From assembly GCA_002269645.1 (NCBI GenBank), contig NIVC01000658.1, positions 62,001 through 126,000 of the forward strand: DNA of 64,000 bases, given 5' to 3'. Below, one piece after another: positions 1 through 38,053 of this stretch. The translations under genes and the position numbers were made by a program. How positions within the stretch are numbered: the stretch's first letter is position 1; each line of letters starts with the position of its first letter. Source of the stretch: Macrostomum lignano. Lineage: Eukaryota. The notes beneath the pieces are model-generated. The model was not told the origin of the DNA, did no database searches, and saw nothing but the letters and a program-made list of their open reading frames with translations.

Positions 1-3000
1 GTTCTTTGAATGTTGGCTTTGACATATTTGCCTGAATAACAGCAGGCTCTGATGAGGTAACAAGTTTCAGGTTTGTTCTTTTCCGCTCATTTCAAGAGTC
101 TTGCCATAGACAGAGTTGTTGGCCAACTTAAAGAGGTTCTTGTCAAAGTCGTTGGTTGCTTTGGTCCTAAACTGGGTGTTCTTATCAATGTAGGGTTTCA
201 TCCACGCTTCCTCTGTAAATGTAAGAGCCCTGTGAACTTTGTGACCCTGCAACCAAGTGAGATAAAATACTGAAGCAGTTTGTAATGATTTTGTAACGTG
301 TCTTGTTGTTTAGATTCTGTGTTAGTTTCTCTGTATGTTCTTTTTCTGTTCCTGACAGGTGCCAAGTTCCATTGGGAGTTTCGATTATTTTCGGGCACTT
401 GATGTTCTCTGGGAAGGGTGGAAAGTCAGAGAAATAGTCGTGAAGCTCTGGTGGAATGTAAACATCAACCTCATAAATGGCAGCCAATGAAAAGTCCCAT
501 TTGAATTCTGATGAGGGTAGCCATCGAAAATCTCTAACTGGAAGATCTTGACTCATCGCCCACCCGTAGAGATTATTAGCGTCCAAGTAAGTAATGTAGT
601 TTGAGGGCTGCTCCTTATTGTAAGATTCAATGTAGGGATTGTTTGCTTTTGCATACCTGTTAACACAAATTGAGATCCCCCTCGCTTTGACGATTCGACA
701 AAATTGTACATGTCAATGTCTGTAAGAAGTTCAATGTACCAATCTGGATCTTGATCCCATTTCATTTTAAGCAAAGATTCCCAGCTAGTGGCAGGCAGAG
801 ACACATAATGTGCTGGATCGAGGCCATATGCTGTGTACCAGGTGTATCTGAAGGTTTCAAACACATCAGCCAGCAGAAACACATCTGTGAAGAGGTAAAG
901 CAGGTGATACTGGAAGAAGTTTTGACAATTAAAGTAATTATAGACATGCTTCGCGTGCTCATAGTCTTTGTCAGAGATTCCAGAGTCTGTTAGCTTTGAA
1001 AAGAACTTTTCCTGTGGTGGTAAACCTTCTTCAAATACGTGATACCCAGTAATATTTTCATAGGGGTAGAAGCCTTTCTTTCTTAAAAGTTTAAATGATT
1101 CATCAGTTCTTGCAAATATCTTTGTATATGTACATTGTTCATCTTTTAGATTCTTGCTTAGTTCGTCTAGACTGGCAGCTAGAAATTGATATGAATCCTT
1201 CAGTCTTATTTTTTACTGTACCCGAATTATCCTGTTTAATATCAACACACTTAAACTTCTCCTTGTTTTCTGCGATGCAATCAAGGTGTATGTCTGGAAT
1301 CATGCCGATTTTTTCAACTATTAAATGCATGTCATAGTTCTTTGCGTTGTGACAAAATATCGTTAGATCATGTTGGATTTTAGCTTTAGATTACAGGTGT
1401 TATGCGCTGCACCTCTAAATTTCCCAGTAAAGTGGCAGTGGTCCCTAACGGTGGGGTTTTTTATATCAGTGCAAGTTAACTGTTTCCTGCAGATGTGGCA
1501 ATGAGTTGCTGATAGGAAATTGCTTTCATCCTCCTCAGTCATCATTATTGGAACAGGTTGAAGAGTGCTAATCACTCTTTGCAACTCTAACATTCTGGCA
1601 ATAAACTGCTCCACACACTGCTCTCCAAAGAAATAATTATACTCAACAAGTCCTTTTGTATTAATAAAGGCATATGCTACTGAATTGGGGACATGTTTTG
1701 AGTTTGAGTTTGTTTTTGAGTTTGAGTTTGTTTTTGAGTATGAGTTTGTTTTTGAGTTTCTGGCATGATTGAGCATTCGAAATCAGCATATACAACAAAT
1801 GGGAGCTTCTCCATCTTGTGATAGTTCTTAAAACGGAGATACTTCTCTTCAGCTGAAGGAAGAGAGCAATTGTCGGGTGATCCTCGCATGATAATTCATG
1901 CTCTGCTAGTTTTTCAAAGCGTCAGGTCCACTGTAATGCTTAAGGCACAAGCGGCAGATGGCAACAGCCTCGTGATGATTATTCAACTGTTGTGAATGAG
2001 TCTTGAAAGATCTTTAATCCAAACATAGTGAGCCTCCTCTAGTAAATTACCAATCACTAGAAGATCCACTTCAGTCCGCCTTTTCCCCTCAGGATCTAAA
2101 ACGTCTTTGCTACATCTGACCGGTTGAACTTTCTCAGTTTTTTCACTCCACTCAAAGACTGTTATTCTAATTTTGTTATTAAACACTTCTTCTAGCTTTG
2201 GGATCTGAGAGATCGCCAAGCCTCCTTTGTCAAACCTGATTCCCTTCTTTTCGCATTCGATGAGATAGTGCTTGAAATAATTTTGATAATTTGAGGTTCT
2301 TTCGGGGTGGTGAGAGACACTATCATGATGAAGTGCAGAAAGAACTGCCCATAGAGCACAGCAGTTGTCTTTATTTTTAACATTTATGCAAGCTTTTTTG
2401 CCGGCTAGCTTATGCGGGAGATCTATATAAGAGGAGGCTTTAAGTGGGTCATATTTCATGACCATAACAGTCGCTCTTTGAATCCCTCCCACGACCCATC
2501 CGGAACCTCTGGATGTAAACGCTTCAATTTTCTTAGTGACATCTTGAAGGAAAGGATCCAGTGTGTCTGTAGGGTGAATGGCTTTGCCTTTGTTGTCATG
2601 TAATACTCGAGATGTCAGTGGGTTTTGCAGGCATATAAAACGCAATCTTGAATGATATCTGTAGTTTAAAGTCTTGCGTGTTTTGAGTGTGTGATCAACA
2701 ACTGATTGGATGCTGTCTTTATAGTCGTAGATGTTTGCGGTGGTGCCGTTTATTGGGATTGTGTACTCTATGTAATGTTCTGTAAACTTCCTCTGTGCAA
2801 AATTAATCTCTTCAGTGGCAAGCTCCGACTCTTTTAAATGGATTAATTGCTCTAATTTCTCTTGTTCCTGCTTATTTTGTGGGTACTTTGCTTTTTCACC
2901 AGTGAGAGTTTCATATTTGTTAACTAAGTTGCGACTCCTCTCTTGGTGTTCCTTTGCAGGATTTTGTATAGGCGCATACTGGTTAGATTCTAATTGGTTG

Positions 3001-3158
3001 ATGATTTCCAACTGTTTTTCATAGCTTCCCAGGTGACCAGGGTCGGTGTTAAACTTTTGTTTGCATGCTTCTCTTAGTAAATTACTTTTGTCTTGAAATG
3101 AGACGCCTTTTGAAAAATATGTGTTGACTAAATCTCTTGCTGGATTGGCTTTTGGCAT
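1..3158 (-). pseudogene. Protein-primed family B DNA polymerase (Polinton type), multiple frameshifts
   Basis: ORF pieces in collinear order: 1983-3158 (RGSGWV..KYDPLKASSYIDLP..INVKNKDNCCALW), 1677-1889 (FKNYHK..FVVYADFE, ExoI), 1363-1776 (VRDHCHFTGKFRGAAHNTCNL), 1139-1330, 553-882 (LLADVFETFR..GLDPAHY..RGG), 185-586 (DANNLYGWAMSQDLP, region II), 67-252 (KLANNSVYGKT, region III). The YGDTDS motif would lie left of base 1. Confidence 0.92.
1695..1759. repeat. Short 18-bp tandem repeat (tttgagtttgagtttgtt) inside PolB
   Basis: About 3.5 copies; reads NSKTNS or QTQKQT in the two PolB frames. Confidence 0.8.
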
Positions 3159-3282
3159 TTTTTCTCGAAAATATAAAAAAAATTTTGAGGGTGACCACCC
3201 TGATAGAAAAGTTGAACTGTTTCTACATCCTATCAGTAGCTTTAGGTTTATGATGCTGGATAAAGTGGGGTTTTAAACCTCA

Positions 3283-3738
3283 TCACATCCGCATTATTGT
3301 AAACCCAGCATTGTGCAGTGTCATGATGGCTTTGACAATGTCAGACTTGCTTACAGAATTTTGATGCTCACAATCACCATGATCATCAAAATCAGGGCAG
3401 CCCTCTCCTGCCTTAATTGTTATACCTTTGTCTCTTGCAATCTTTTGCAATTCTAGCTGGTGGGCTCTATCATTCCCAGCTTTAACAGCAGTTGCTACAC
3501 CTCCAGCTACACCACCTGCGGCACTTACGGCGCCTGCAATGATTGGGATAAGAGCTGCTAATGGTAGGATTCCTCCTGACTTTTCATCTGTGATGCTGTG
3601 TCTTTGCTCATTACACTGAACTATTTGCTGCACGGGATCGATTTTTACTTTGGCACCTTTAATTGATATAAGGCCTGGTCTCTTTGATTCAATGATTTTA
3701 TTGAGTTTATTGATGGTTTTGGTTTCGATCTTTGTCAT
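3283..3738 (-). CDS. Adenovirus pX(mu)-like virion core/membrane protein, 151 aa
   Basis: GGILPLAALIPIIAGAVSAAGGVAGGVATAV closely resembles the adenovirus pX C-terminal GGILPLLIPLIAAAIGAVPGIASVA, followed by the AVKAGNDRAHQLELQK segment typical of Polinton X proteins. Intact ORF. Confidence 0.72.
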   Translation of the reverse strand: MTKIETKTINKLNKIIESKRPGLISIKGAKVKIDPVQQIVQCNEQRHSITDEKSGGILPLAALIPIIAGAVSAAGGVAGGVATAVKAGNDRAHQLELQKIARDKGITIKAGEGCPDFDDHGDCEHQNSVSKSDIVKAIMTLHNAGFTIMRM

Positions 3739-3755
3739 TTTTTTATTTTAATATT

Positions 3756-4770
3756 TTAATTAATTTCTGTGTCAGCTGGTATCACTAGGAGTTCAGCTCT
3801 AGTGAATGACCGCGTGGGGGATTTAGGGTTAAAGGCTTGAGATAAAAAGTAATACTCTCCAGAGTCGGAGGTAAAATGTCTGTCTATTTTATGTACATCA
3901 AGGCTGAAGTATGGATCTGTAGCTCTTCTTTTAGTGTCCTTCTAGCTCTCCAGGTAGATATAAAAACCGTAGAAACTCAGAGTTTGTCAGTATGTATGGG
4001 GATTCAACTCTTGGAAGCTTAGGGTAGTTCGAGGTGTGTTTTGTGTTGTGCGTGTTGTCTGTTCTATGAGATGTCTTAAGTTTGACAATGTCTTGTTTAA
4101 TTGCATGGGACGGTTTCAATCCAGTCATGCGTGTGACTTCATTGTTCAGTTGCTCTATAACAATGGGGAGTCTTTCTGTCCACTTGGTATAGTACTGCCC
4201 CGCACTCAGTTTGAGTTCTTGCGCTGTCTGCTTAGTGAATAGTCTCTTGGCTAGAGTTAAATTAAATCTCTCAACGTACGCTTGGTCCCTGTGCAGGTCT
4301 GTTCTTCCGTAGCGAATCTTCGTATTTTTCTTTTCCATAAGGGATTTGACTGCACCCATGAATTCCTTACCTGGGTCGGTCATAAAGATTTCAGGGTAAC
4401 TAAGGGACGAGTTTTTATAAATATCTTGGAGTGCGGCTGCAACTGCTTCTGATTGTTTAGTCTTTAGTGGGCGAGCTTCCTTATATCTGGAGGCAATGTC
4501 TGTAATGGTAAGAGCATACTTGTAGCCTGAGTCATTGGGGAGAAACAGAAGATCTGCTTGGTGCGCCTCATTAGGTTTATAAATACTGAAATGGGGCCTT
4601 TCAAATTTTACTGGTGGGAAATAGACTTGAAAGACAGCCTGCTTAGAGAGCCATTTTTCTACTGTAGCTTTTGGCTCCTTACTCAGCTCCATGAGTTTAC
4701 TAACGGCATTTTTGCCTACAAAGAATCCTTTGTCGCTGTAGTAGAGTTTTTTAAGTTTCTGATCTGTCAT
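3756..4770 (-). pseudogene. Polinton retroviral-like (rve, DDE) integrase, one frameshift near 3931-3934
   Basis: HQADL (D), TDPGKEF (D), YVERFN (E). ORF 3931-4770 stops at GELEGH*, but the shifted frame continues KRRATDPYFSLDVHKI..RSFTRAELLVIPADTEIN* to a stop at 3756-3758, matching the usual C-terminus of this integrase group. Confidence 0.9.
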
Positions 4771-4799
4771 TTTTTAAAAATAAATTTTAAAATAAAATA

Positions 4800-5279
4800 A
4801 TGCAACGCTCTGGTGGTAAATTAGATTCACATGGACTGATAGAAAAGCTTCCTCATCCAAACAAAGGCTGGACAGTTCCCGGGTACAAATATTGCGGGCC
4901 TTTGAATCCACTTGAAATACAGCTGGATGGATACAACAACCCAAATCCTGGACATGAGCCTGTGAACGAGCTAGACTCTGTCTGCATGTGGCACGATGTT
5001 AAGTATAGAGATTTTCCAGAGGAGAAGAATCGCTGGGACAAAGAAATGCTTAGGAGATTAGACAATATGGGGACTTCAAGCGGATTTCGTGAGTCGATTG
5101 CTAGGAAATTAGTCAAGGCGGTTATTTTTGGTAAGACAAAATTGGGGTTGGGGGTGTACGCCGAGGGCGGGTGCTTGGGGAGAGAGGGCGGACGCTCGGG
5201 AGCCGGGTTTATTTTGCACGCACCAAGTGAAAAACTAGGAAGACTGCTGAAAGAGCTGGGGGTTGAGAGAGCAGAATGA
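4800..5279 (+). CDS. Parvovirus VP1u-type phospholipase A2 domain protein, 159 aa
   Basis: PGYKYCGPLN (Ca-binding YxGP loop), PVNELDSVCMWHDVKY (catalytic HDxxY) and the AVIFGKTKLGLG tail seen in Polinton PLA2 proteins. Confidence 0.87.
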   Translation: MQRSGGKLDSHGLIEKLPHPNKGWTVPGYKYCGPLNPLEIQLDGYNNPNPGHEPVNELDSVCMWHDVKYRDFPEEKNRWDKEMLRRLDNMGTSSGFRESIARKLVKAVIFGKTKLGLGVYAEGGCLGREGGRSGAGFILHAPSEKLGRLLKELGVERAE

Positions 5280-5831
5280 TTCAAGCAAGAAAATACAGCT
5301 GGATTAGCGGCTGTTTGGGAGAAGAGTTAAGTTTTCTGGCCTTTTGGCCTTCGCTTCTCTTCTCTTCACACAAGTGTACAGTCTTGAGCACACTGGTTTC
5401 GGCTACAATCTCTCTTTCCACCATGCCCTTCTCCTTTATGCTCCTCACCTCGCGCTATGCTCTGTGTACAGAGAAGTCTCACCCCTCACTTTCTATCGTA
5501 CACTGAGCTATATCGATTTTTTTGTTTCCCTGCTTGACTCCAAGATTGTACAGTCTTGAATTTTCTGGAATTTTCTATTGCGAGAAGGGGTGTGTGTGTG
5601 TGTTTGTATTGCCCACTAAAGAAATAGGCAGACTGTAGGAGAAATAGGAAAAATTTGTTTCTAGCGGACGCTCGAATTCGCGGAATTGTTTAGCGTGATT
5701 ACTACCATGTGCAATCCCGCCATAACATCTATACTCTGGTGACCGAGCTTCTGCGGCTCCGCTTTTGCTCTGTTTCGGCTACATTCCTGCATGACAGCTC
5801 AAGAACGATTCGGAGCGAAAGGTGGTGGCAA

Positions 5832-6920: not shown

Positions 6921-7312
6921 GAAAAATTTTGTCCCAGAAGCCCCCTCATGCCTTCTACTCAGATTAAATCAGTACAGTAGTAAAACTAAATAAAACTATA
7001 AGAGTCAAATCAATTAAATTTAAACCTTAAAACATATGATAGAGTAAAAGGTGAGAGAACCAAAGAAGAGATTGGATAAAACTAAAAACAAATAAGTAGA
7101 AAGTATGTACAGTGTAGAGATGCACAAAGGATTGGAGAGAATTTTTCAGATATTGGTGAATAAAGTTAAAGCTGGGCTGTATTTGTCTACTGTGAGTAGA
7201 TAGAGCCTCCCTGAATGTATGACACCTTTACGAAAACAAAGGTTTAAGTATGGTGAGTTACAGAAAAAAGTAAATATCAAGGACCCTACCCCAGTAGCCC
7301 GAGATCATTCAT

Positions 7313-7380
7313 GGAGAGCAACGACCTGCGCCTCCCCGAGGTGCCCTCTGGAGGACCGAAAGGCCCACGAAATGCAGGTC
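7313..7380 (+). ncRNA. HDV-like self-cleaving ribozyme (predicted nested double pseudoknot)
   Basis: P1 GGAGAGC 7313-19 / GCCCTCT 7343-49 (G1-U wobble, one A-C mismatch); P2 GACCTGC 7323-29 / GCAGGTC 7374-80; P3 GCC/GGT closing L3 TCCCCGA; P1.1 CC/GG 7350-51; P4 GGACC-GAAA-GGCCC; J4/2 CGAA with putative catalytic C7368. G1 is the first base after the TSD. Confidence 0.8.
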
Positions 7381-7463
7381 AGCAACGGGCCTTTCCAGAG
7401 ACCCACACCGCGACGCAGTCTCTTCGCCGCCCAATTGGCATCTGGCGGCCACCTGCCGATTAA

Positions 7464-10400
7464 ATGACTAGCCGACGCCTGAACCAGCCCGCCGAGCCTC
7501 AACGGCGGGCCCCCGGCGGCGCGAGGCGCCCCCCGACCCAGCGGCCCGTGCGCGCGCGGCCCCCCAGTAGCCTGCACCTCCTGCAACTCAACGCAGAGGG
7601 CGTCGCCTCCAAGATGCCCGAATTGTGCAAGCTGCTGCTGGATCTGCGCATCGACGTGGCGTGCCTGCAAGAGACCCACACCACCGAGGGTCGGGATCCG
7701 CGCCTGCCGGGGTTCAACGCGATCTGGCGCCACCGACAGAGCGGCCGGCGCTCCGGCGGCCCCACGCGCGGAGGAGGCGCTGCAATCGTCATCCGCGAGG
7801 GGCTGCGCTTCGAGGTGCTGCAGGAGCGCCCCTGCGCCCCCGATGACGTCACCACGGAGTGGGCCGGCGTCCGGGTTTTCCCCTCTGAAAAGAGCGTCGA
7901 GAGCCTGGACATCCACTGCCTCTACATCCCGCCGATCAGAACGGCTGAAGGCGACGACCGCGTGCAGCGCTTCAGCCCCCGGCACCTCCCGTCCGGCGTC
8001 AACACGGTGATCCTGGGCGACCTGAACGCGCACCATCCAGCCTGGGACCCCGAATCGGAAGAGTCGGACCTGGGCACGGCGGTCTTCGAGTGGTCCGTGG
8101 TGTCCGGCATGCGCGTCCTGAACGACGGCAGCGCCACCCACATGCCGCGCCGCGCCAACACCCGGCAGACGGCGCCTGACGTCAGCCTGTGCCACAAGTC
8201 GCTCGCCAACCGGGCCGAGTGGCAGGTCCGGGGAGACGTCGGCTCGGACCACCTGCCGATCTGCATCACCATCCACAGCCGAGGCGCGGCCAAGCGCGGG
8301 GGCGCCGCCCGGCGGTCCTGGGCGAAGGCGGACTGGGCCAGTTTCCGCGCCCGGACCGAGGAAGCCCTGGCTGGCTGGGAGGCCTGCCCGCCCGAGTCGG
8401 TCAGCGAGGCCAACCAGCAGCTGACCACGGCCATCCAGGAAGCCGACAAGGCGTCTGTCCCTCGCGGGGCGCGGCCCTCCGCCAAGGCCTGGTGGACGCC
8501 AGAGGTCGACGACGCCGTGAAGGCTCGCCGCGCCGCGTGGGCCGCCGCCGCCGCCGACCCGAGCGTGCGGCCTGCCTGGAATCGAGCCTGTGCCGACGCC
8601 AAGAAGACGATCGCCGACGCCAAACGCGAGAGCTGGAGGACCTTCGCCGGCGAGGTGGCAGCTGACAGCGACCACTCCAAGATCTGGAGAATTGTCCGCT
8701 CCCTCGACGGCAGAAACAGCAACCTGCAGCGGGACGCAGCGCTCCGGGTGGGCCAAAAGACGCTCGTCCAGTCGAAGGACATCGCCGAGGCCTACGCCCG
8801 TGAGTATGCCTCCGTCAGCCGCCTCCCGCAAGACCGCAGGACGCGAGACCTCCGCCGCGAGAACTTCCGCAGCAGCGTTTCGCGAGCCGGCGCCGACAGC
8901 CATGGGAGCAGAGACTTTGGAAAGCCGTTCTCGCACCGCGAGCTGGACAGGGCTCTCCACTCCCTCCCGGCCAGGAAGGCCCCAGGACCCGATGAGATCT
9001 GCGCTGAACATCTGCAGCACCTCGGTGCCGCTGGCCGCCGGGCGGTCCTGCAGCTGATCAACGCGTCCTGGACCCAGGGGGAGGTCCCCGCGGCGTGGCG
9101 CCGTGCCCACATCGTGCCGATCCTCAAGAAGGGCAAGCCGGCCGACGAGATCGGCTCATACCGGCCGATTGCCCTTACCTCCACTCTGGCCAAGCTGGCC
9201 GAGCGTCTGGTTCAAGCGCGGCTCTACTGGTGGGCCGAGTCCCGGCACCTGCTGCACCCCGCCCAAGCCGGCTTCCGCAAGCGGCGCAGCACCGAGGACC
9301 AGATTGCCCGGCTCACCCAGCTCATCAGCGACGGCCACCAGGCGGCCCCCGCCAGGCGGACGGTCGTCGTCCTGTTCGACTTCCGGCGGGCGTACGACAC
9401 CGTCTGGAAGCAGGGCCTGCTGCACAAGCTGCACAACGCCGGCATCCCAGCGGCCGGGGTCCGCTGGGTCAGCAGCTTCCTGGCCGATCGCCGCGCTGCC
9501 GTCAGGGTGGACGGCGCGCTGAGCAGCTGGCGGCTCTTCCGCGAGGGCCTGCCACAGGGGAGTGTCCTTGCCCCTCTGCTCTTTGCGCTGTACATCAACG
9601 ACCTGCCTGACCACCTGCCGTCCGACTGCACGCCGTTCCTCTACGCCGACGACCTGGCCATCGCAGTGCAAGGCCTGACCGTGGAAGAGGCCGAGACGAA
9701 GGCGCAGGCTGCGATCGACGCGGTCTCCGACTGGGCGAACGAGTGGCGGATGGAGCTGGCGCCGAACAAGTGCGCCGCTTCCCTGTTCACCACCACCGCC
9801 GGAGAGGCCAGCCGTGAGCTGCGTCTGCGGCTGAACGACGCCCCGCTCTCGACGGACCGCCAGCCGCGCTTCCTCGGCGTCATCCTGGACCGGCTGCTCA
9901 GCTTCACGGCGCACGCCGCCAACGTCGCCGGCCGCGCCCGCGCCCGCTGCGGCGTTCTGGCGGCGCTGTCTGGCAGCAACTGGGGCGCCAAGCAGAGCGA
10001 CGTGCGCCAGCTCTACACGGCCTATGTGCGGCCGGTGCTGGAGTACGCTGCCGGCGCCTGGATGCCGACGGCCTGCAGGACAGCTATCGACCACCTGGAC
10101 CGGGCCCAGCGCCTGGGCGCGCGCATCATCACCGGGTGTCCACGGAACACCAGGTCGGAGGTGCTGGAGCGCGAGGCTGGATTGCCGCCGATGGCAGTCC
10201 GCGCGGAGATGCACGCTGGCCTCCTCCACGAGCGCGCCCTCCGGCTGCCGCATGACAACCCGCTGCGCGCCTGCGCGGCCAGCGTCGGCCCGCGCCGCCG
10301 CCTCCAAAGCGCCCGCGGCTGGCGCGAGACGGCGGCCAGTGTATGCAGCGCTGCGGGCCTGAGCGGCTTCCCGCGAGAGCCCGTCCACTCGGGCCTCGCT

Positions 10401-10544
10401 TGCCTGGCACCTTGCCTGCACGGCGGGCCGCCTGCCGCCTCAGCCGACAAGCGACCTCACGCGGCGGCAGGAGCGGCTGATCTGCCAGCTGCGCGCCGAC
10501 CGCTGCCCGGCCCTGCGGGGCTTCCAGGCCGCCATCGGCGTTGA
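7464..10544 (+). CDS. APE endonuclease + reverse transcriptase polyprotein, 1026 aa (last ~55 aa out of native frame)
   Basis: APE: QLNAEG, CLQETH, GDLNAHH, SDHLPI. RT: SYRPIALTS, QAGFR, FDFRRAYDTV, GLPQGSVLAPLLF, YADD. Thumb region WGA..VRPVLEY, RIITG, LEREAGL. Confidence 0.95.
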   Translation: MTSRRLNQPAEPQRRAPGGARRPPTQRPVRARPPSSLHLLQLNAEGVASKMPELCKLLLDLRIDVACLQETHTTEGRDPRLPGFNAIWRHRQSGRRSGGPTRGGGAAIVIREGLRFEVLQERPCAPDDVTTEWAGVRVFPSEKSVESLDIHCLYIPPIRTAEGDDRVQRFSPRHLPSGVNTVILGDLNAHHPAWDPESEESDLGTAVFEWSVVSGMRVLNDGSATHMPRRANTRQTAPDVSLCHKSLANRAEWQVRGDVGSDHLPICITIHSRGAAKRGGAARRSWAKADWASFRARTEEALAGWEACPPESVSEANQQLTTAIQEADKASVPRGARPSAKAWWTPEVDDAVKARRAAWAAAAADPSVRPAWNRACADAKKTIADAKRESWRTFAGEVAADSDHSKIWRIVRSLDGRNSNLQRDAALRVGQKTLVQSKDIAEAYAREYASVSRLPQDRRTRDLRRENFRSSVSRAGADSHGSRDFGKPFSHRELDRALHSLPARKAPGPDEICAEHLQHLGAAGRRAVLQLINASWTQGEVPAAWRRAHIVPILKKGKPADEIGSYRPIALTSTLAKLAERLVQARLYWWAESRHLLHPAQAGFRKRRSTEDQIARLTQLISDGHQAAPARRTVVVLFDFRRAYDTVWKQGLLHKLHNAGIPAAGVRWVSSFLADRRAAVRVDGALSSWRLFREGLPQGSVLAPLLFALYINDLPDHLPSDCTPFLYADDLAIAVQGLTVEEAETKAQAAIDAVSDWANEWRMELAPNKCAASLFTTTAGEASRELRLRLNDAPLSTDRQPRFLGVILDRLLSFTAHAANVAGRARARCGVLAALSGSNWGAKQSDVRQLYTAYVRPVLEYAAGAWMPTACRTAIDHLDRAQRLGARIITGCPRNTRSEVLEREAGLPPMAVRAEMHAGLLHERALRLPHDNPLRACAASVGPRRRLQSARGWRETAASVCSAAGLSGFPREPVHSGLACLAPCLHGGPPAASADKRPHAAAGAADLPAARRPLPGPAGLPGRHRR

Positions 10545-10725
10545 CGTGGCCCCCACCTGCCGCTTCTGTGGCGATGGAGAGGAGACGGCGGCCCATCTGC
10601 TGATCTCCTGCCCCGCCCTGACATCACACCGCTGCCGCCTCTGGGGGCCAAGCCCGGAGCCCGCGGCAGTTTTCGAGAACTGCGTCGCGGTGTTGAACTT
10701 CCTCGGGAAGGCGGGCGCCATCTGA
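10381..10725 (+). pseudogene. Out-of-frame native C-terminus of the retrotransposon ORF with CCHC zinc finger
   Basis: Shifted frame reads PSTRASLAWH..LTRRQERLICQLRADRCPAL..PTCRFCGDGEETAAHLLISCPAL..NFLGKAGAI* (CX2CX8HX4C); stop at 10723-10725. Confidence 0.85.
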
Positions 10726-10879
10726 CGCCCGGTGCCATGGGCCCTGGCCCGAGCACGCCCGAAGAAGAAGAAGAAGAAGAAGAAGAAGAAGATCATTCAT
10801 TGTATTGCCACCAAGTCGCAGTCTTGGTGAGTCCGAAATGATTCCATACCAGAAATACCATATTTGTATTTTTCACTCT

Positions 10880-11152
10880 AGTTTTCGAGCTTATGAAGTC
10901 GCCTGCTAAAATTTTCGAGGATATGAAATTTCGAGCTTATGAAGTTTCGGGTTTTTGAAAGTGGCTGCAAAAATGGTTTTCGAGGTTGTGAAATTTTGAG
11001 CTTGTAAAATTTCGAGCTTATTAATATGAAGTCGGCTGCTGAAATTTTCGAGGTTGTGAAATTTCAAGCTTATGAAAATAACTGGTTTCGATGTTGTGAA
11101 ATTTCGAGCTTATGAAAATAACTGGTTTCGATGTTGTGAAATTTCGAGCTTG
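10880..11152. repeat. Degenerate tandem repeat (aaatttcgagcttatgaa core)
   Basis: Core motif recurs about 8 times, with one exact 40-bp duplication. Confidence 0.65.
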
Positions 11153-21896: not shown

Positions 21897-23650
21897 GAAA
21901 GCTCAAATCGGCGCTGGAAAGCTCAAATCGGCGCGGGAAAGCTCAAATTGGCGCCGGAAGTCAAATTTGGCGCCAGGATCACCAAATCGGCGCCAGGGAT
22001 CGCCGAATCAGCGCCGGAATGCTGAAAGCCGCTCGAGAAAACCTAAACCAGCGCTAGAGAGCTGAAACCAGCGCTAGAAAGCTCAAATCGGCGCGGGATA
22101 GCTCAAATTGGCGCAGGATAGCTCAAATTGGCGCAGGATAGCTCAAATTGGCGCAGGATAGCTCAAATTGGCGCAGGATAGCTCAAATTGGCGCCGGTCG
22201 GCGCCAGGATCACCGAATCAGCGTCGGAATGCTAAAATCAGCGCCAAAAAGCCCGGACCAGCGCTAGAAAGCTCAAATCGGCGCAGGATAGCTCAAATTG
22301 GCGCGGGAAGTCAAATTTGGCGCCAGGATCACCAAATCGGCGCCAGGATCGCTGAATAAGAGCCGGAATGCTGAAAACAGCGCCAAAAAGCCCGGACCAG
22401 CGTTGGAAAGCTCAAATCGGCGCAAGATAGCTAAAATTGGCGCGTGAAAGCTCAAATTGGCGCCGGAAGTCAAATTTGGCGTCAGGATCACCAAATCGGC
22501 GCCAGTATCGCCAAATCAGCGCTAAAAAGCCCGGACCAGCGCTGGAAAGCTCAAATAGGCGCGGGAAAGCTCAAATTGGCGCCGGAAGTCAAATTTGGCG
22601 CCAGGATCACCAAATCGGCGCCAGGATCGCTGAATCAGCGCCGGAATGCTGAAATCAGCTCAAGAAAACCTAAACCAGCGCTAGAAAGCTCAAATCGGCG
22701 CAGGATAGCTCAAATAGGCGCGGGAAAGCTCAAATTGGCGCCGGAAGTCAAATTTGGCGCCAGGATCACCAAATCGGCGCCAGGATCGCCGAATTAGCGC
22801 CGGAATGCTGAAATTAGCTTGAGAAGACCTTAACTAGCGCTGGAAAGCTCAAATTGGCGCTAAAAAGCCCGGACCAGCGCTGGAAAGCTCAAATAGGCGC
22901 GGGAAAGCTCAAATTGGTGCCGGAAGTCAAATTTGGCGCCAGGGTCACCAAATCGGCGCCAGGATCGCTGAATCAGCGCCGAAATGCTGAAATCAGCTCA
23001 AGCAAACCTAAACCAGCGCTAGAAAGCTCAAATCAGCGCTAGAAAGCGCAAATCGGCGCAGGATAGCTCAAATTGGCGCGGGAAAGCTCAATTTGGCGCC
23101 GAAAGTCAAATTTGGCGCCAGGATCACTAAATCGGCGCGAGGATCGCCAAATCAGCGTTGGAATGCTGAAATCAGCGCCATAAAGCCCGGACCAGCGCTG
23201 GAAAGCTTAACTTGGCGCGGTAAAGCTCAAATTGGCGCCGAAAGTCAAATTTGGCGCCAGGATCGCCGAATCGGCGCCAGGATCATCAAATCGGCGCCAG
23301 GATCGCTGAATCAGCGCCGAAATGCTGAAATCAGCTCAAGAAAACCTAAACCAGCGCTAGAAAGCTCAAATCGGCGCAGGATAGCGCAAATCGGCGCGGG
23401 AAAGCTCAAATTGGCGCCGGAAGTCTAATTTGGCGCCAGGATCACCAAATCGGCGCCAGGATCGCCGAATTAGCGCCGGAATGCTGAAATCAGCTTGAGA
23501 AGACCTTAACTAGCGCTGGAAAGCTCAAATTGGCGCTAGAAAGCTCAAATCGGCGCAGGATAGCTCAAATTGGCGCGGGAAAGCTCAATTTGGCGCCTAA
23601 AGTCAAATTTGGCGCCAGGATCACCAAATCGGCGCCAGGATCCCCAAATC
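21897..23650. repeat. GC-rich degenerate multi-unit satellite (aaagctcaaattggcgc / ggcgccaggatc)
   Basis: 16-20-bp subunits organised in a larger recurring block; source of many repetitive ORFs. Confidence 0.9.
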
Positions 23651-23922
23651 AGCGCTGGAATGTGCCAACGAGCGTAGAAGTGGCAGCATATATCAGCTTG
23701 CTACTTCTGGGCGCCAAGTTTAATATACCGGCGCCAATTTCAGCCTTTGGGCGCCAATTTTAGCGCCCTGGCAAGGTCAATGCATTTAGTTCTCACTCAA
23801 TGGAGCCGAAAAAAAAGTTTTTTTTTCTATTTTGAATTAGTGCCATGTATCTTGACAACCAATGCGAGTCAAGTTCTGGCGTCTGCTTCTCCACAGCCCC
23901 GCAATGGCATATCCTAACCATT

Positions 23923-24017
23923 GTGGGCTGGCCCGCGCTAAGGGAGCCCACCCCACCGTGGGGCGGACCCCGCTAACGGGCTATTTTTAGCGTGGGATGG
24001 GCTCCGCTAACGGGCGG
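23923..24017. repeat. GC-rich dispersed repeat, copy 2 (inverted relative to 13225-13319)
   Basis: gtgggctggccc..acgggctatttttagcgtgggatgggctccgcta matches the reverse complement of copy 1. Confidence 0.8.
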
Positions 24018-24547
24018 CCATAAACTGAGTGGATTGTCTGGCTAGCCCACGGCCGTTAGGTGCAGAGTGGGGTTTATGTGCGTGAGGAGGGGGACGGGCG
24101 CGAGTGTACACTGGGGAAGAGTGGGGTCAGTGTACACTGGGAATAGTGGCCAGTTTGAGGCCTGTTCTGTAGCGTAACTTTAAGTGTTATTCAGAAACAA
24201 AGAAGAGTTAAAAATAGACAACTGAAGATAAACGTCACAAATTGAATAGATTTAAAGCAGCTTATAACTTAATCCGCTGAATAGCTAAAAAAATGTCAGA
24301 TCAGCATAAATGAAATGAATAAGAAAATGAACTGCAAGAATATTAATTAAAAGTTTTTGTTCCGCCTCAGATTTGGCGACTGTGACGACATTTGTAATTA
24401 CAGAACGAGAAGTCAGTCAGCTATTGTGCTGCTTTTATTCATGTTTCAACAGCTGATTTCAGTTCGGGATTTCATACAAAACCTTAATTATATTATATGA
24501 CATCATTTAAAAAAGATGATAGCAGGATGCCGTTGGAGAATGTCCCT

Positions 24548-24925
24548 CCAGCGTCACCCCTGATAACCCTCCAGCGACCTCCTGATAACCCTCCAGCGAC
24601 CTCCTGATAATCCTCCAGCGACACCCCTGAAAAACCTCCAGCGACATCCCTGATAACCCTCCAGCGACACCCCTGATAATCCTCCAGCGACACCCCTGAA
24701 AACCCTCCAGCGACATCCCTGATAACCCTCCAGCGACACCCCTGAAAACCCTCCAGCGACACCCCTGATAACCCTCCAGCGACACCCCTGAAAACCCTCC
24801 AGCGACATCCCTGATAACCCTCCAGCGACACCCCTGAAAACCCTCCAGCGACATCCCTGATAACCCTCCAGCGACACCCCTGAAAACCCTCCAGCGACAC
24901 CCCTGATAACCCTCCAGCGACCTCC
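24548..24925. repeat. 23-bp minisatellite (ccctccagcgacacccctgataa) just 3' of the PPCS stop
   Basis: About 16 copies. Confidence 0.95.
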
Positions 24926-24961
24926 TGCAAAAGCCCAAATAGACGCAGTGAAACAGAAAGA

Positions 24962-25201
24962 TCAATTTTTGAAAAAGTGCTTGCAATGATAATCGGCTAA
25001 AAAGTCAACAATGTCTCCTTCAATCTCGTCTGCCCCGTCTCGGCGCACAGTCCTGCAGTCGCCGCCGCGGCAGTAGAGCCACACAATCTCCCGCCGGCTC
25101 TGCAATAAATTCGCTACAACCACGTGATGCCCGTAATTAGCCAGGGCGCCTTTCGCTTTGCCTTTGAGCAAGCGCTCGTCTGTTTCCAGTTTAAACGTCA
25201 C
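24962..25201 (-). CDS. PPCS: PPCS exon 3
   Basis: gtgcag| VTFKLETD..LANYGHHVVVANLLQSR, stop TGA at 24962-24964. Confidence 0.92.
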   Translation of the reverse strand: MTFKLETDERLLKGKAKGALANYGHHVVVANLLQSRREIVWLYCRGGDCRTVRRDGADEIEGDIVDFLADYHCKHFFKN

Positions 25202-25725
25202 CTGCACGGAAGGTTTTTCGGCCAGTTTAAAATCAATTAGGTCAAGCTGTGCTTTTCTAGGAATTAAACTTCTTTAATCCTTCGAGATAGATTTCCTAAG
25301 AAAAAGCAAAGTTTTATCCCCCAATGGCGATTCCTAAGAAATTTGCTTGGGAGAGCTTTAATGGAAATCAAAGATTTACAGTGAAGTCGCGATTTCTTAG
25401 AAACACAATTTCAAATTCGGTTTTACGTACATTTTACTAGAATGAATAAAAACGAGTATATGTAAAATAACTCTATAAGGCTAATATTTTCTAAGAAACG
25501 CGCCTCCACTGTCTGTTCAAAGAGAAAAAGAAAACATTTCCCAGGCATCATTATCTTTGTGATTTTTTTAACAAAACAAAAAATAAAAATTTTCTAACGT
25601 GTTGTTTTCAATTTTCCAAGAAGCTATAAGTTCATAAACATAAATACTTCAGACAAGTTTGATATCCGCTTCTAAAAAGAACCATCTGGCTCCAATTTTA
25701 AAGACATTTCCAAGAAACCGCTTAC

Positions 25726-26061
25726 CACGAGACTCCCCGGCAGAGTCTCCCTAACCAGGTTGCCCAGCAGTTTCGGCACCAGATGCAGCCGGATGCTGGG
25801 CTCACCAGCCGAGGATTGGATCTTGTGCTCCGGCAGGCTGCCAAACGGCACGTAGAAGTCCGACACGGCGGCGGCCAGGTAGAGCAGGACCCGGCCGGAC
25901 AGGGGTGCCAGCAGTTCGGCCAGCCGGTGCAGCAGGCTGAGGTACTCCTGCACAGTGACATACGGCACCAGCAGCAGGTGATTCGGTCCAGCTAATTGAC
26001 GGTACTCTTTCAATAGACTGGCGATCTCCGGCCGGTAATCGGGTTGGAATGCCACGCCGAC
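25726..26061 (-). CDS. PPCS: PPCS exon 2
   Basis: cgcacag| VGVAFQ..LYLAAAVSDFYVP..HKIQS..LVPKLL |gtaag; 336 nt, phase 0/0. Confidence 0.92.
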
Positions 26062-26164
26062 CTGTGCGGGAGATGGGTGGGTGACCAGACAAACGTAGCA
26101 TAACGCCCCAAAGCCAGCAACAACGGCTCAAAGCCATAGACAACCCCATCACAAAGTCATTGAC

Positions 26165-26398
26165 AACCGAAACAAAGTTATAAACAACAGAAACAAATCC
26201 ATAGACAACCGAAACAAAACCATAGACAACCGAAACAAAACCATAGACAACCGAAACAAAACCATAGACAACCGAAACAAAGCCATAGACAACCGAAACA
26301 AAGCCATAGACAACCGAAACAAAACCATAGACAACCGAAACAAAACCATAGACAACCGAAAAAAGCCATAGACAACCGAAACAAAGCCATAGACAAGC
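26165..26398. repeat. 21-bp minisatellite filling PPCS intron 1
   Basis: ccatagacaaccgaaacaaaa, about 11 copies. Confidence 0.95.
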
Positions 26399-26406
26399 CC
26401 GCCAAC

Positions 26407-26745
26407 CTGACTATCGGGGACCAGCAATCGACCCAGCAGCTGCTCTGCCGGAGGCAGCCGGTGCGCAAACGGCAGCATGGAGCCCTGGCGGTGCAGAAAA
26501 ATGGTCGCATAGCCGCGCCTCAGAAACGCTTCACCAGACAGGGCGCCCCGACTGCCAACGCTGAAATTGTCGATAAAACGCACCGTCTGAGCTTCCAAAG
26601 GCACTTTGGTGCCGCCCGACGTCACCAGGGCAACCCGAGCATCGGCGGGAAGTTGGGAGATGAAAGCGGCCGCGTCTGCTAAGCGGGAATCGTCGGCGGG
26701 AACCGCCGATAGAAACTCAGACAGCTGATCTGTAGGAGGCGGCAT
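26407..26745 (-). CDS. PPCS: Phosphopantothenate--cysteine ligase (PPCS) exon 1
   Basis: [42 protein letters not shown] matches eukaryotic PPCS; ATG 26745, donor CAG|GT at 26407/26406; total about 304 aa. Confidence 0.93.
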
Positions 26746-26956
26746 GAAATCAATGATGATTGATGCTAATTCTGAGGAGAAACCGAAAGAATTAAGTTGA
26801 GCAAAACCTAAGAATATAAAATGTGAGTAAAAAAACCTAGAACTCATACTAGGGTCAGTATGATTAATACCTGTCATAAACTTAACTTTTGGGGATCTTG
26901 CAGACTCTGCACAACACCCGGTCGATCCTGCCTACCCGAAAAAGTACGGACGGAGT

Positions 26957-38028: not shown

Positions 38029-38053
38029 GTGAGTCCTTTAGGGCACCTGATCT

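What the first reader, a model, noticed from the sequence alone, without database searches (positions are those of the whole stretch)
7313..7380. HDV-like ribozyme beginning at the exact first base of an Ingi-like retrotransposon
Seen: all five helices (P1 with G1-U, P1.1, P2, P3, P4 with GAAA tetraloop), an L3 (UCCCCGA) resembling HDV/CPEB3 L3, and a J4/2 CGAA. G1 directly follows the 10-bp TSD, as expected if self-cleavage defines the RNA 5' end. Knowledge: such ribozymes are known in R2, RTE and trypanosome L1Tc/ingi elements. Deviations: an A-C mismatch in P1, an A-C mismatch in P4 and a J4/2 two nucleotides longer than canonical. Inference: a probably unannotated ribozyme that frees the element from host read-through transcripts.
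Basis: partly seen in the sequence, partly recalled or inferred. Interest (0 to 1): 0.82.

Follow-up and report, generated by a model that had tools for sequence, protein, structure and literature searches.

The report
HDV-like ribozyme heading a flatworm retrotransposon
The first 68 bases of a defective jumping gene (a non-LTR retrotransposon, probably in the flatworm Macrostomum lignano) fold like the hepatitis-delta-virus self-cutting RNA, and distant relatives keep the same fold through compensating mutations, so this is most likely a real, unannotated member of a known kind of ribozyme that trims the element's RNA to its exact 5' end.

Summary
Window 7313-7380 (+) can form all five HDV-type helices, and G7313 is the first base after an 11-bp target-site duplication (AGATCATTCAT, not 10 bp).

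- **Rfam:** it does not call the motif. The HDV model scores 19.4 bits against a cut-off of 50.
- **Chance:** a descriptor hit starting at one given base of shuffled element sequence is expected about 4e-5 times.
- **Relatives:** six more elements, with proteins 37-39% identical, carry the same fold. Five have it upstream of the same endonuclease/reverse-transcriptase ORF on the same strand. The sixth (L090) has it right after another copy's 3' tail.
- **Covariation:** across six sequences 96.5% of pair cells are paired, against about 45% when partners are slid. Five P1 and five P2 pairs show compensatory changes. P3, part of L3 and the J4/2 cytosine are invariant.
- **J4/2:** the "too long" J4/2 is a family trait (C-S-A-A-(A)-Y).
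- **5' end:** in one relative (L087) a duplication again abuts G1.

This copy has lost its RNase H region and has two A-C mismatches, so its own activity is doubtful. Cleavage is inferred, not shown. "Ingi-like" was not tested. It is a new member of a known kind (R2, RTE, L1Tc and others).

The parts
7302..7312 (+). 5' copy of the target-site duplication, AGATCATTCAT
   Evidence: The identical 11-mer is at 10790-10800 right after the (GAA)n tail. The next bases differ (G7313 versus T10801).
7313..7380 (+). HDV-like ribozyme candidate, 68 nt. The predicted cleavage site is 5' of G7313.
   Evidence: Descriptor hit. Sub-threshold RF00094 match. Family covariance model score 59.8 bits, but this sequence was in the training set. 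Covariation across relatives.
7313..7319 (+). P1, 5' strand GGAGAGC. It pairs with 7343-7349.
   Evidence: Six of seven positions pair, with a G7313.U7349 wobble and an A7317-C7345 mismatch. Five of the seven P1 pairs show compensatory changes among relatives.
7323..7329 (+). P2, 5' strand GACCUGC. It pairs with 7374-7380. J1/2 is AAC at 7320-7322.
   Evidence: Seven Watson-Crick pairs. Five of seven pairs show compensatory changes and 100% of cells are paired.
7330..7342 (+). P3 (GCC/GGU) enclosing L3 UCCCCGA. C7334 and C7335 form P1.1 with G7351 and G7350.
   Evidence: P3 is invariant in the six aligned sequences. The C23-G39 pair of P1.1 is invariant and the other pair is present in 4 of 6. 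The stretch aligns to the HDV consensus gCCUCCuCGcUGG.
7343..7351 (+). P1, 3' strand GCCCUCU, followed by GG of P1.1
7353..7366 (+). P4 hairpin GGACC-GAAA-GGCCC with an A7355-C7364 mismatch
   Evidence: Sequence. P4 is short in L085 and L090 and roughly 45-75 nt in L004, L086, L087 and L088. L090 has a perfect CCCCG-GAAA-CGGGG.
7367..7373 (+). J4/2 ACGAAAU. C7368 is the candidate catalytic cytosine.
   Evidence: The C and the following S-A-A are conserved in all seven sequences (consensus C-S-A-A-(A)-Y). The 1-2 extra bases before P2 are therefore a family trait.
7374..7380 (+). P2, 3' strand GCAGGUC
7372..7467 (+). 31-codon upstream ORF. Its AUG is made of the last two J4/2 bases plus the first base of the P2 3' strand. 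Its UGA overlaps the main ATG (ATGA).
   Evidence: Translation. L086 and L088 have the same CGAAAUGG, and L087 has an AUG right after P2. The peptides are not conserved.
7461..7471 (+). Stop/start cassette TAA-ATG-A-C-TAG: stop codons in all three frames spaced 4 nt apart, around the main ORF start codon at 7464
   Evidence: The same TRR-N-TRR-N-TRR pattern is present in all six relatives aligned.
7488..7509 (+). GC-rich hairpin CCCGCCG-AGCCUCAA-CGGCGGG, about 20 nt after the start codon
   Evidence: A hairpin at the same place in all six aligned elements, with different stem sequences in L085 and L087. Seen by eye only.
7464..10544 (+). Main ORF, 1026 aa: AP-type endonuclease plus reverse transcriptase. 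The frame is lost at its 3' end.
   Evidence: Pfam PF03372, PF14529 and PF00078. 93% identical to a Macrostomum lignano protein, P0001.
10375..10725 (+). C-terminal zinc-finger segment in another frame. The junction of an internal deletion that removed the RNase H region lies at about 10375-10391.
   Evidence: tblastn of P0001: residues 657-893 end at 10391 in frame 3, and residues 1108-1222 start at 10375 in frame 1. zf-RVT match at E = 2.8e-4, below the Pfam cut-off.
10761..10789 (+). (GAA)n 3' tail
   Evidence: Relatives end in (CAA)n or (CCA)n tails.
10790..10800 (+). 3' copy of the target-site duplication, AGATCATTCAT

Best explanation
Window 7313-10789 is one 5'-complete but internally deleted copy of a non-LTR retrotransposon. 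Its order is AP endonuclease, reverse transcriptase, [RNase H, deleted here], zinc finger, then a trinucleotide-repeat tail.

Its first 68 nt encode an HDV-like (nested double-pseudoknot) self-cleaving ribozyme. In a transcript that starts upstream of the element, the ribozyme would fold as it is made. C7368 in J4/2, with a bound Mg2+, would catalyse attack of the 2'-OH of the base before G7313. That cuts off all upstream RNA and leaves an element RNA beginning exactly at G7313 with a 5'-OH. Reverse transcription of that RNA to its end explains why new copies begin at G1 right next to the target-site duplication.

Shown:
- the fold;
- its position at the element's first base;
- its conservation with covariation in relatives.

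Inferred:
- catalysis;
- co-transcription from upstream;
- any role of the folded ribozyme in cap-independent translation.

This copy, with A-C mismatches in P1 and P4 and a competing CCUCC/GGAGG helix, is probably a weakened relic of an active master copy.
For: 1. All HDV-type elements are present at 7313-7380. The P3-L3-P1-P1.1 core aligns to the Rfam HDV consensus.

2. G7313 immediately follows the 11-bp duplication. The chance rate of a descriptor hit at one given base is 3.6e-5.

3. The same fold occurs in six more elements. Five are L004, L085, L086, L087 and L088, which belong to proteins 37-39% identical to the window ORF and carry the fold upstream of the homologous ORF on the same strand. 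The sixth, L090, carries it directly after another copy's 3' tail.

4. Covariation on six sequences:
- 96.5% of pair cells are paired, against 38-54% when 3' partners are slid.
- 10 of 19 pairs have changes on both sides, five in P1 and five in P2.
- No shuffle out of 500 reached the observed values for four of the five measures; for further pair types 6 of 500 did.
- P3, the C23-G39 pair of P1.1 and the J4/2 C-x-A-A-A are invariant.

5. 5' ends in relatives:
- In L087 an 11-bp duplication (CCTGCCAGGGC) directly abuts G1.
- In L088 a duplication is followed by 5 extra nt and then G1.
- In L090 G1 directly follows the tail of an upstream copy.

6. Negative control: of 142 exact matches to the core motif in prokaryotic and viral contigs, only 2 also have P1 and P2 pairing. 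None of these has G.U and the C-N-A-A J4/2.

7. Positive control: the same descriptors pick up an unrelated HDV-like motif upstream of endonuclease and RT ORFs in L079.

8. L090 5310-5363 independently draws a sub-threshold match to RF02682, another HDV-family model.

9. Geometry fits published requirements: a 6-7 bp P1, a short J1/2 spacer and a P2 of about 7 bp (PMC4908430).

10. Ribozyme-terminated non-LTR elements are an established mechanism (PMC6765202; PMC3185411 and PMC3774820, listed).
Against: - There is no cleavage assay and no RNA 5'-end data.
- No curated Rfam model reaches its threshold.
- This copy has A-C mismatches in P1 and P4.
- The non-pseudoknotted minimum-energy fold (-24.3 kcal/mol, z = -1.46) uses an alternative CCUCC/GGAGG helix that competes with P3, P1.1 and P4.
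- J4/2 has 1-2 more bases than in HDV. The effect on the active site is unknown.
- L088 and L090 have G1-C instead of the G.U wobble.
- I located the relatives' motifs partly by eye, knowing the target fold. The covariance model found nothing new in the 80 more distant metagenome loci.
- No convincing motif was seen in L001, L002, L003, L089 or L091, some of which are cut at the 5' end.
- No other copy from the same genome could be examined.
- P3 and P1.1 never vary, so covariation says nothing about them.
Confidence: 0.8

Rival explanations
1. The conserved double-pseudoknot-like 5' structure is real but does not cleave. It would serve as a binding site for the element's own protein, as an IRES-like translation element, or (as DNA) as an internal promoter such as Pr77 of L1Tc. 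The element's 5' end would then be set by transcription initiation.
For: - Covariation proves helices, not catalysis.
- R2 protein binds a pseudoknot within its ribozyme region, and HDV-like ribozymes are proposed to act as IRESs (PMC6765202).
- Pr77 and L1TcRz occupy the same 77 nt (PMC3383444).
- An AUG sits at the J4/2-P2 junction in three members.
- J4/2 is longer than in HDV.
Against: - The invariant positions are those of the HDV active site: the G.U at the cleavage site in 5 of 7, the L3 cytosines, the GG of P1.1 and the J4/2 C-S-A-A. A mere binding scaffold need not keep them.
- In the window and in L087, G1 coincides with the element's first base.
- These other roles are known to coexist with cleavage in R2 and L1Tc rather than replace it.
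Confidence: 0.1
2. The family once had an active ribozyme, but the motif in this window is a dead relic that no longer cleaves. This rival concerns this copy only; the family-level claim stands.
For: - The copy has lost the RNase H region and its reading frame.
- Its protein is about 7% diverged from the closest known copy.
- There are two A-C mismatches, each explained by a single transition from a G-C or A-U pair, while P1 is fully paired in L004, L086, L087, L088 and L090.
- A competing alternative helix is about as stable as the nested parts of the ribozyme fold.
Against: - Single mismatches, especially A-C which can form a protonated wobble, are often tolerated in P1 and P4.
- P2, P3, L3, P1.1 and J4/2 are intact.
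Confidence: 0.45
3. Chance resemblance: a GC-rich 5' UTR that happens to satisfy an HDV descriptor.
For: - The relaxed descriptor hits shuffled GC-rich element sequence about 0.12 times per strand per element.
- The Rfam score is far below threshold.
- The folding z-score is unremarkable.
Against: - The hit starts at the base fixed independently by the duplication (about 4e-5).
- Six relatives with different P1 and P2 sequences keep the pairing.
- Core-motif matches elsewhere almost never come with P1 and P2 (2 of 142).
Confidence: 0.02

Closest known systems
[quoted passage not shown]
   Same: - The ribozyme occupies the very first bases of a dispersed, duplication-flanked element.
- The element encodes AP endonuclease, reverse transcriptase, RNase H and a C-terminal nucleic-acid-binding domain (PMC6765202).
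- The proposed job is release from longer co-transcripts.
   Different: - The host here is a flatworm plus unknown marine eukaryotes, not trypanosomatids.
- The tail is a trinucleotide repeat.
- No sequence relation to Pr77 was tested, and promoter activity is unknown.
- According to PMC4035085, the trypanosomatid ribozymes differ from HDV and R2 in P1 and P1.1 composition. The motif here is close to HDV in P3, L3 and P1.1.
R2 element 5' ribozymes of insects and other animals (PMC3774820; Eickbush and Eickbush 2010, as cited in PMC6765202)
   Same: - An HDV-like fold at the 5' junction.
- Cleavage defines the 5' end of the element RNA from a co-transcript.
- Proposed extra roles in translation and protein binding.
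   Different: - R2 is site-specific in 28S rDNA and uses a restriction-like endonuclease.
- Its ribozyme spans about 184 nt.
- The element here has an AP-type endonuclease, inserts in dispersed sites with duplications, and has a minimal 68-nt ribozyme.
HDV-like ribozymes of RTE, Baggins, SART, R4 and R6 elements (Ruminski et al. 2011, J Biol Chem 286:41286; recalled from memory, the paper could not be opened)
   Same: 5'-terminal HDV-like ribozymes in AP-endonuclease non-LTR elements. They were reported to promote translation initiation of the downstream ORF.
   Different: - Those are different element clades, in arthropods, nematodes and chordates.
- No flatworm or Macrostomum example turned up in the searchable literature.
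Genomic HDV ribozyme (Rfam RF00094) and the mammalian CPEB3 ribozyme
   Same: - The same nested double pseudoknot.
- Near-identical P3-L3-P3' core (GCCUCCCCGAGGU here versus gCCUCCuCGcUGG in the HDV consensus).
- G.U at the cleavage site, GG of P1.1, and C-G-A-A in J4/2.
   Different: - The score is 19.4 bits against a gathering score of 50.
- P4 is reduced to a 5-position stem with a GAAA loop.
- J4/2 has two more bases before P2.
- The setting is a retrotransposon 5' end, not a circular RNA replicon or an intron.
Twister-variant ribozymes at the 5' end of Perere-3 and SR3 non-LTR elements of Schistosoma mansoni (PMC8501958)
   Same: A flatworm AP-endonuclease non-LTR element whose 5' end, next to the duplication, is a self-cleaving ribozyme.
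   Different: A different ribozyme class (twister, not HDV) and a different element clade.

Membership tests
HDV-like self-cleaving ribozymes (nested double pseudoknot) | A 6-7 bp P1 that starts at the cleavage-site nucleotide, with a G1.U wobble at its base | tested here: met
   7313-7319 / 7343-7349: 6 of 7 positions pair, with G7313.U7349. Five of seven pairs covary. G.U in 5 of 6 aligned sequences and G-C in L088. L090 also has G-C.
HDV-like self-cleaving ribozymes (nested double pseudoknot) | A P2 of about 7 bp that crosses P1 (first pseudoknot), joined to it by a short J1/2 spacer | tested here: met
   7323-7329 / 7374-7380, 7 bp, with a 3-nt J1/2. Five of seven pairs covary and 100% of cells are paired. 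The geometry matches PMC4908430.
HDV-like self-cleaving ribozymes (nested double pseudoknot) | A 3-bp P3 closing a loop L3 of about 7 nt, directly followed by the 3' strand of P1 | tested here: met
   GCC / UCCCCGA / GGU, then GCCCUCU. P3 is invariant in six sequences, so it gets no covariation support. L090 has ACC/GGU, a one-sided change that keeps the pair.
HDV-like self-cleaving ribozymes (nested double pseudoknot) | P1.1: one or two G-C pairs between L3 and the bases right after P1 (second pseudoknot) | tested here: met
   C7334,C7335 with G7351,G7350. One pair is invariant; the other is present in 4 of 6 (the UUCAAG subfamily has GU after P1). This is sequence compatibility only.
HDV-like self-cleaving ribozymes (nested double pseudoknot) | A P4 hairpin of variable size between P1.1 and J4/2 | tested here: met
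   GGACC-GAAA-GGCCC with one A-C mismatch. P4 is short in L085 and L090 and roughly 45-75 nt in the other four relatives.
HDV-like self-cleaving ribozymes (nested double pseudoknot) | A catalytic cytosine in J4/2 followed by N-R-A just before the 3' strand of P2 | tested here: inconclusive
   C7368-G-A-A is present, and the C plus A-A are conserved in all seven. However, 1-2 further bases ((A)Y) separate it from P2 in every member. Whether the active site tolerates this is unknown.
HDV-like self-cleaving ribozymes (nested double pseudoknot) | Mg2+-dependent site-specific self-scission 5' of G1, giving 2',3'-cyclic phosphate and 5'-OH ends | not testable with these tools
   Needs a transcription/cleavage assay or 5'-OH-specific RNA sequencing.
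Rfam RF00094 (HDV ribozyme) and other curated HDV-family models | Score at or above the family's gathering threshold | tested here: not met
   No hit at gathering thresholds. RF00094 scores 19.4 bits against 50, E = 1.1. L090 scores 22.2 against 44 for RF02682, and the other relatives are not hit.
Ribozyme-terminated non-LTR retrotransposons (R2, RTE, L1Tc type of use) | The ribozyme cleavage site coincides with the element's first base at the 5' junction | tested here: met
   Window: the duplication ends at 7312 and G1 is 7313. L087: the duplication CCTGCCAGGGC abuts G1. L088: duplication, 5 nt, then G1. L090: G1 follows the tail of another copy. L085 and L086 are unresolved.
Ribozyme-terminated non-LTR retrotransposons (R2, RTE, L1Tc type of use) | Transcription enters from upstream (host or neighbouring promoter) and the element RNA is released by cleavage | not testable with these tools
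   The upstream flank is a Maverick/Polinton-like element on the opposite strand. No expression data were available.
   The window ORF has endonuclease and RT. RNase H is absent here through a deletion but present in the 93%-identical P0001 and in most relatives. The same architecture also fits the I, Nimbus, LOA, R1 and Tad1 groups.
   No reference set of clade representatives was available. Database names of hits ('transposon BS', 'jockey') carry no clade information. Ingi-type elements are reported from molluscs, so a metazoan Ingi is plausible (PMC11203168).

The most novel reading that the evidence does not exclude
The 5' 200 nt would form one integrated expression module for a cap-less, ribozyme-processed RNA.
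- The folded HDV-like ribozyme recruits ribosomes to an AUG built into its own J4/2-P2 junction. The two 'extra' J4/2 bases are the A and U of that codon in the window, L086 and L088.
- The short, non-conserved upstream ORF then ends at a conserved 11-12-nt cassette. The cassette has stop codons in all three frames and carries the main ORF's start codon (UAA-AUG-A).
- A conserved GC-rich hairpin about 20 nt downstream promotes termination-reinitiation.

The same cassette would also stop any host reading frame that runs into the element.
Probability: 0.2. Interest if true: 0.6.

Novelty: new member of a known kind. Interest (0 to 1): 0.45.

Why it matters
It adds a well-supported HDV-like ribozyme family to a group of RNase H-bearing, AP-endonuclease retrotransposons in a flatworm laboratory model (Macrostomum lignano) and in unidentified marine eukaryotes. 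Curated RNA models miss it.

Possible uses:
- It gives genome annotators a marker for the true 5' end of these elements.
- It provides a very compact natural HDV-like sequence (68 nt, GAAA-capped P4) with an unusual extended J4/2, which tests how much slack the active site tolerates.
- The adjacent three-frame stop/start cassette offers a tractable system for asking how ribozyme-processed, uncapped retrotransposon RNAs are translated.

It does not change the general picture, which has been established since 2010-2011 for R2, RTE and L1Tc.

Tried and rejected
- **Rfam on the whole window at gathering thresholds:** nothing.
- **Other copies in the window:** none by tblastn or blastn, or by a 22-mer search with 3 mismatches.
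- **Look-up of the M. lignano protein P0001 to reach other genomic copies:** not on record. All 12 contig look-ups were then spent on more distant relatives.
- **Covariance model R1 (P1 plus P3 nested):**
  - It recovered only its six training sequences among 89 sources.
  - With filters off on six further loci it added L090, and gave a partial, unconvincing hit in L002.
- **80 metagenome loci with proteins 23-52% identical over their best-matching segment:**
  - No family member was found by either descriptor.
  - Many of these loci lack the 5' end.
- **L001, L002, L003, L089, L091:**
  - No convincing motif was found.
  - L002 can be drawn as an HDV-like fold with a 5-bp P1 and a structured J1/2, but I did not count it.
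- **Exact-pattern scans of prokaryotic genomes and viral contigs with the core motif:**
  - They returned only chance matches in GC-rich DNA.
  - I used these as a negative control.
- **Minimum-energy folding and z-score:** uninformative for a pseudoknot.
- **Target-site duplications for L085 and L086:** not found.
- **Papers:** Ruminski 2011 and Webb 2009 could not be opened.
- **Clade assignment (Ingi versus I, Nimbus and others):** not attempted for lack of reference sequences.
- **Open in-phase frame through the 5' UTR:** I considered whether it was meaningful and rejected it, because all three frames are open in this GC-rich sequence.
Full report
**1. What is at the coordinates**

Window 7313-10789 is a GC-rich island (about 70% G+C) in AT-rich DNA. 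It carries one long ORF, 7464-10544 (1026 aa), with AP-type endonuclease (PF03372, PF14529) and reverse-transcriptase (PF00078) domains. A zinc-finger segment follows in another frame and runs to 10725. After a 35-nt 3' UTR comes a (GAA)n tail at 10761-10789.

The 11-mer AGATCATTCAT occurs at 7302-7312 and again at 10790-10800, right after the tail. The bases that follow differ (G7313 versus T10801), so the element's first base is G7313.

The closest protein in the databases is a Macrostomum lignano entry, P0001 (93% identity). The host is therefore probably that flatworm. Compared with P0001 this copy lacks residues 894-1107, which include the RNase H domain, and it loses its frame at about 10375-10391. 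It is a 5'-complete but defective copy. No second copy lies in the window.

**2. Check of the observation**

| Element | Coordinates | Sequence and notes |
|---|---|---|
| P1 | 7313-7319 / 7343-7349 | G.U at the base; A7317-C7345 mismatch |
| J1/2 | 7320-7322 | AAC |
| P2 | 7323-7329 / 7374-7380 | 7 bp |
| P3 | 7330-7332 / 7340-7342 | GCC/GGU |
| L3 | 7333-7339 | UCCCCGA |
| P1.1 | 7334-7335 with 7350-7351 | CC with GG |
| P4 | 7353-7366 | GAAA loop; A7355-C7364 mismatch |
| J4/2 | 7367-7373 | A-C7368-G-A-A-A-U |

- **Descriptor scan.** I wrote a descriptor without reference to the coordinates. It finds this site and only one other, a weak AU-rich site, in both strands of the window.
- **Shuffles.** In 150 dinucleotide shuffles of the GC-rich element the descriptor hits 3.6e-5 times per base and strand. 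A hit somewhere in such an element is not rare. A hit starting on the one base fixed independently by the duplication is about 4e-5.
- **Rfam.** There is no hit at curated thresholds. On a 301-nt slice the best of 4227 families is the HDV ribozyme, at 19.4 bits against a cut-off of 50, E = 1.1. Its P3-L3-P1-P1.1 core aligns almost base for base.
- **Ordinary folding.** This is uninformative, as expected for a pseudoknot: -24.3 kcal/mol, z = -1.46. It does reveal a competing CCUCC/GGAGG helix.

**3. Evidence from relatives**

A protein search returned 44 relatives. Apart from P0001 they are at most 44% identical, and most come from marine or other metagenome assemblies. I fetched the DNA of eleven of them and 80 further metagenome loci.

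Six relatives carry the same fold. Five of them are 37-39% identical at the protein level and have it upstream of the homologous ORF on the same strand. The sixth is L090.

| Locus | Position | P1 | P2 | J4/2 |
|---|---|---|---|---|
| L004 | 186-301 | GCCGTCC/GGACGGT | GAGTCCC/GGGACTC | CACCAAAC |
| L086 | 105-228 | GCCGTCC/GGACGGT | GGACTCC/GGAGTCC | AACGAAAT |
| L088 | 8147-8262 | GCCGTCC/GGACGGC | GGACTCC/GGAGTCC | CTCGAAAT |
| L085 | 682-748 | GACTCCC/GGGAGGT | GGATCC/GGATCC | GCCAAAC |
| L087 | 300-393 | GCACCCT/GGGGTGT | GAGAGCC/GGCTCTC | ACCAAAC |
| L090 | 5310-5374 | GCAGCAC/GTGCTGC | GCCTCC/GGAGGC | ACGAAC |

- **Covariation.** I counted pairs on the MAFFT alignment of the window plus five relatives, using the full pseudoknotted structure.
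  - 96.5% of pair cells are standard pairs, against 38-54% when the 3' partners are slid by 1-3 columns.
  - 10 of 19 pairs change on both sides, five in P1 and five in P2.
  - No shuffle out of 500 reaches the observed percentage paired, pairs or cells changed on both sides, or covariation score. For further pair types 6 of 500 do.
- **Invariant positions.** P3 (GCC/GGU), one P1.1 pair, the L3 U-x-C and the J4/2 C-x-A-A-A never vary in these six sequences.
- **J4/2 length.** The consensus is C-S-A-A-(A)-Y before P2. The "two extra nucleotides" are therefore a family trait and not damage in this copy.
- **Independent pointer.** L090 draws a sub-threshold match to another HDV-family model, RF02682.
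- **Caveats.** I located several of these motifs by eye with the fold in mind. The covariance model built from them found only its own members, plus L090, among all loci. Five other near relatives gave no convincing motif, and some of those contigs are cut at the 5' end.

**4. Controls**

- **Negative control.** An exact-pattern scan for the conserved core gave 142 matches in GC-rich prokaryotic and viral contigs. Only two also allow P1 and P2, and none of these has G.U together with a C-N-A-A J4/2.
- **Positive control.** The descriptors also picked up an unrelated, canonical-looking HDV-like motif in L079. It has an 8-bp P2 and J4/2 GCUAA, and it lies just upstream of endonuclease and reverse-transcriptase ORFs of a different element.

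**5. The 5' ends**

- In L087 an 11-bp duplication (CCTGCCAGGGC) directly abuts G1 on one side and the (CAA)n tail on the other, exactly as in the window.
- In L088 the duplication (A)GTCAGTCG is followed by five extra bases and then G1. Short untemplated additions are common at non-LTR 5' junctions (my own knowledge).
- In L090 G1 directly follows the (CCA)n tail of another copy.
- L085 and L086 could not be resolved, and the L004 contig lacks its 3' end.

As far as it can be tested here, the ribozyme's first base is the element's first base.

**6. Mechanism**

The best-supported reading is the known one for R2, RTE and L1Tc (PMC6765202; PMC3185411 and PMC3774820, listed). A transcript entering from upstream folds into the double pseudoknot. 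The J4/2 cytosine (C7368) and a bound Mg2+ catalyse cleavage 5' of G7313. The released RNA begins at G1 and is copied to its end during target-primed reverse transcription.

- **Shown:** the fold, its position, its conservation and its covariation.
- **Inferred:** catalysis, transcription from upstream, and any translational role.

The geometry (7-bp P1, 3-nt J1/2, 7-bp P2) lies within the range reported as active (PMC4908430).

This particular copy may cleave poorly, for three reasons:
- It has two A-C mismatches, each one transition away from a pair.
- It has a competing alternative helix.
- The copy as a whole is decayed.

**7. Surroundings that bear on the mechanism**

- **Stop/start cassette.** All six aligned elements carry, at the main ORF's start, a cassette of three stop codons in three frames spaced 4 nt apart (window 7461-7471, TAA-ATG-A-C-TAG). 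The start codon sits inside it, and a GC-rich hairpin lies about 20 nt downstream (window 7488-7509).
- **Upstream ORF.** In the window, L086 and L088 the last two J4/2 bases plus the first base of the P2 3' strand spell AUG. That AUG opens a short, non-conserved ORF running to the cassette; in the window it is 31 codons and ends at a UGA overlapping the main AUG.
- **Interpretation.** This fits an element that expects ribosomes arriving from upstream, or that initiates at the ribozyme, but it is untested. The openness of the in-phase frame itself is not meaningful, since all frames are open in this GC-rich stretch.
- **Upstream flank.** It holds a Maverick/Polinton-like element on the opposite strand, with an rve integrase, an adenovirus protein-X-like core protein and a PLA2-like domain. 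No host gene running into the retrotransposon is evident.

**8. Comparison and novelty**

The arrangement works like L1TcRz, R2 and RTE. By structure it belongs to the HDV-like family. The one defining property that cannot be tested here is cleavage, and the extended J4/2 is the one structural departure. It fails the Rfam sequence models, as HDV-like ribozymes outside the virus usually do.

The "Ingi-like" label is compatible with the domain order but was not tested. Ingi-type elements are reported in molluscs (PMC11203168).

No paper in the searchable library links Macrostomum with a ribozyme, or HDV-like ribozymes with flatworms. Schistosome non-LTR elements use twister variants instead (PMC8501958).

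**Verdict:** a genuine, unannotated new member of a known kind, of moderate interest.

Noticed in passing
window 7461-7509; also L004 ~483-540, L086 ~425-480, L088 ~8457-8510, L085 ~905-965, L087 ~585-645: At the main ORF's start there is a conserved cassette of three stop codons in three frames, spaced 4 nt apart, with the start codon inside it (UAA-AUG-A). A GC-rich hairpin follows about 20 nt downstream. This looks like a termination-reinitiation or 'stop all incoming frames' device.
   Followed up: partly
window 7372-7467: The AUG formed by A7372-U7373 (J4/2) and G7374 (P2) opens a 31-codon ORF that ends at a UGA overlapping the main AUG. L086 and L088 have the same CGAAAUGG, and L087 has an AUG right after P2. 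The peptides are not conserved.
   Followed up: partly
window ~10375-10391: Junction of an internal deletion. About 214 aa, including the RNase H domain, are missing relative to the 93%-identical M. lignano protein P0001, and the frame shifts. The two flanking alignments overlap by 17 nt.
   Followed up: partly
window 185-5279: Remnants of a Maverick/Polinton-like DNA element, mostly on the minus strand. It has an rve integrase (3931-4770), an adenovirus protein-X-like core protein (3283-3738), an endonuclease VII-like segment (1363-1776) and ORFs that by eye resemble a protein-primed DNA polymerase (185-882, 1983-3158). On the plus strand there is a parvovirus-type PLA2-like domain (4800-5279).
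   Followed up: partly
window ~10880-11150: Tandem repeats of about 35-45 bp (…AAATTTTCGAGGTTGTGAAATTTCGAGCTTATGAA…) lie just downstream of the element.
   Followed up: no
window 22000-27000, 36000-40000, 45000-48000, 52000-54000; 46001-47000 and 48001-50000: There are further GC-richer islands, possibly other mobile elements or genes. Some stretches have extreme strand skew (GC skew 0.75 at 46-47 kb and 0.67 at 48-50 kb, with AT skew -0.53), which suggests simple repeats.
   Followed up: no
L079 1645-1718 (minus strand): An independent, canonical-looking HDV-like motif: P1 GGGGGCC/GGCCCCU, P2 8 bp, L3 UCCACGU, J4/2 GCUAA. It lies just upstream of endonuclease (891-1394) and RT-N-terminal (72-647) ORFs of a different non-LTR element in a metagenome contig.
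   Followed up: partly
L090 5290-5430: A ribozyme copy directly follows the (CCA)n tail of a full-length element. After it come only about 60-70 nt of GC-rich sequence before AT-rich DNA. It could be a tandem insertion of a severely deleted copy or a short non-autonomous derivative.
   Followed up: no
L004 156-185 versus ~485-515: The 30 nt just 5' of the ribozyme (GGTAAATGAACCCAGACGCCCTCGCCGTGT) duplicate the segment around the ORF start and end in the same GCCGT as the ribozyme's first bases. This looks like a template jump by microhomology at the RNA 5' end during insertion.
   Followed up: no
L002 11-135: This stretch can be drawn as an HDV-like fold with a 5-bp P1, a structured J1/2 insert, P2 TGCCGGG/CCCGGCA and J4/2 CAAAAGT. 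It is too irregular to count.
   Followed up: no
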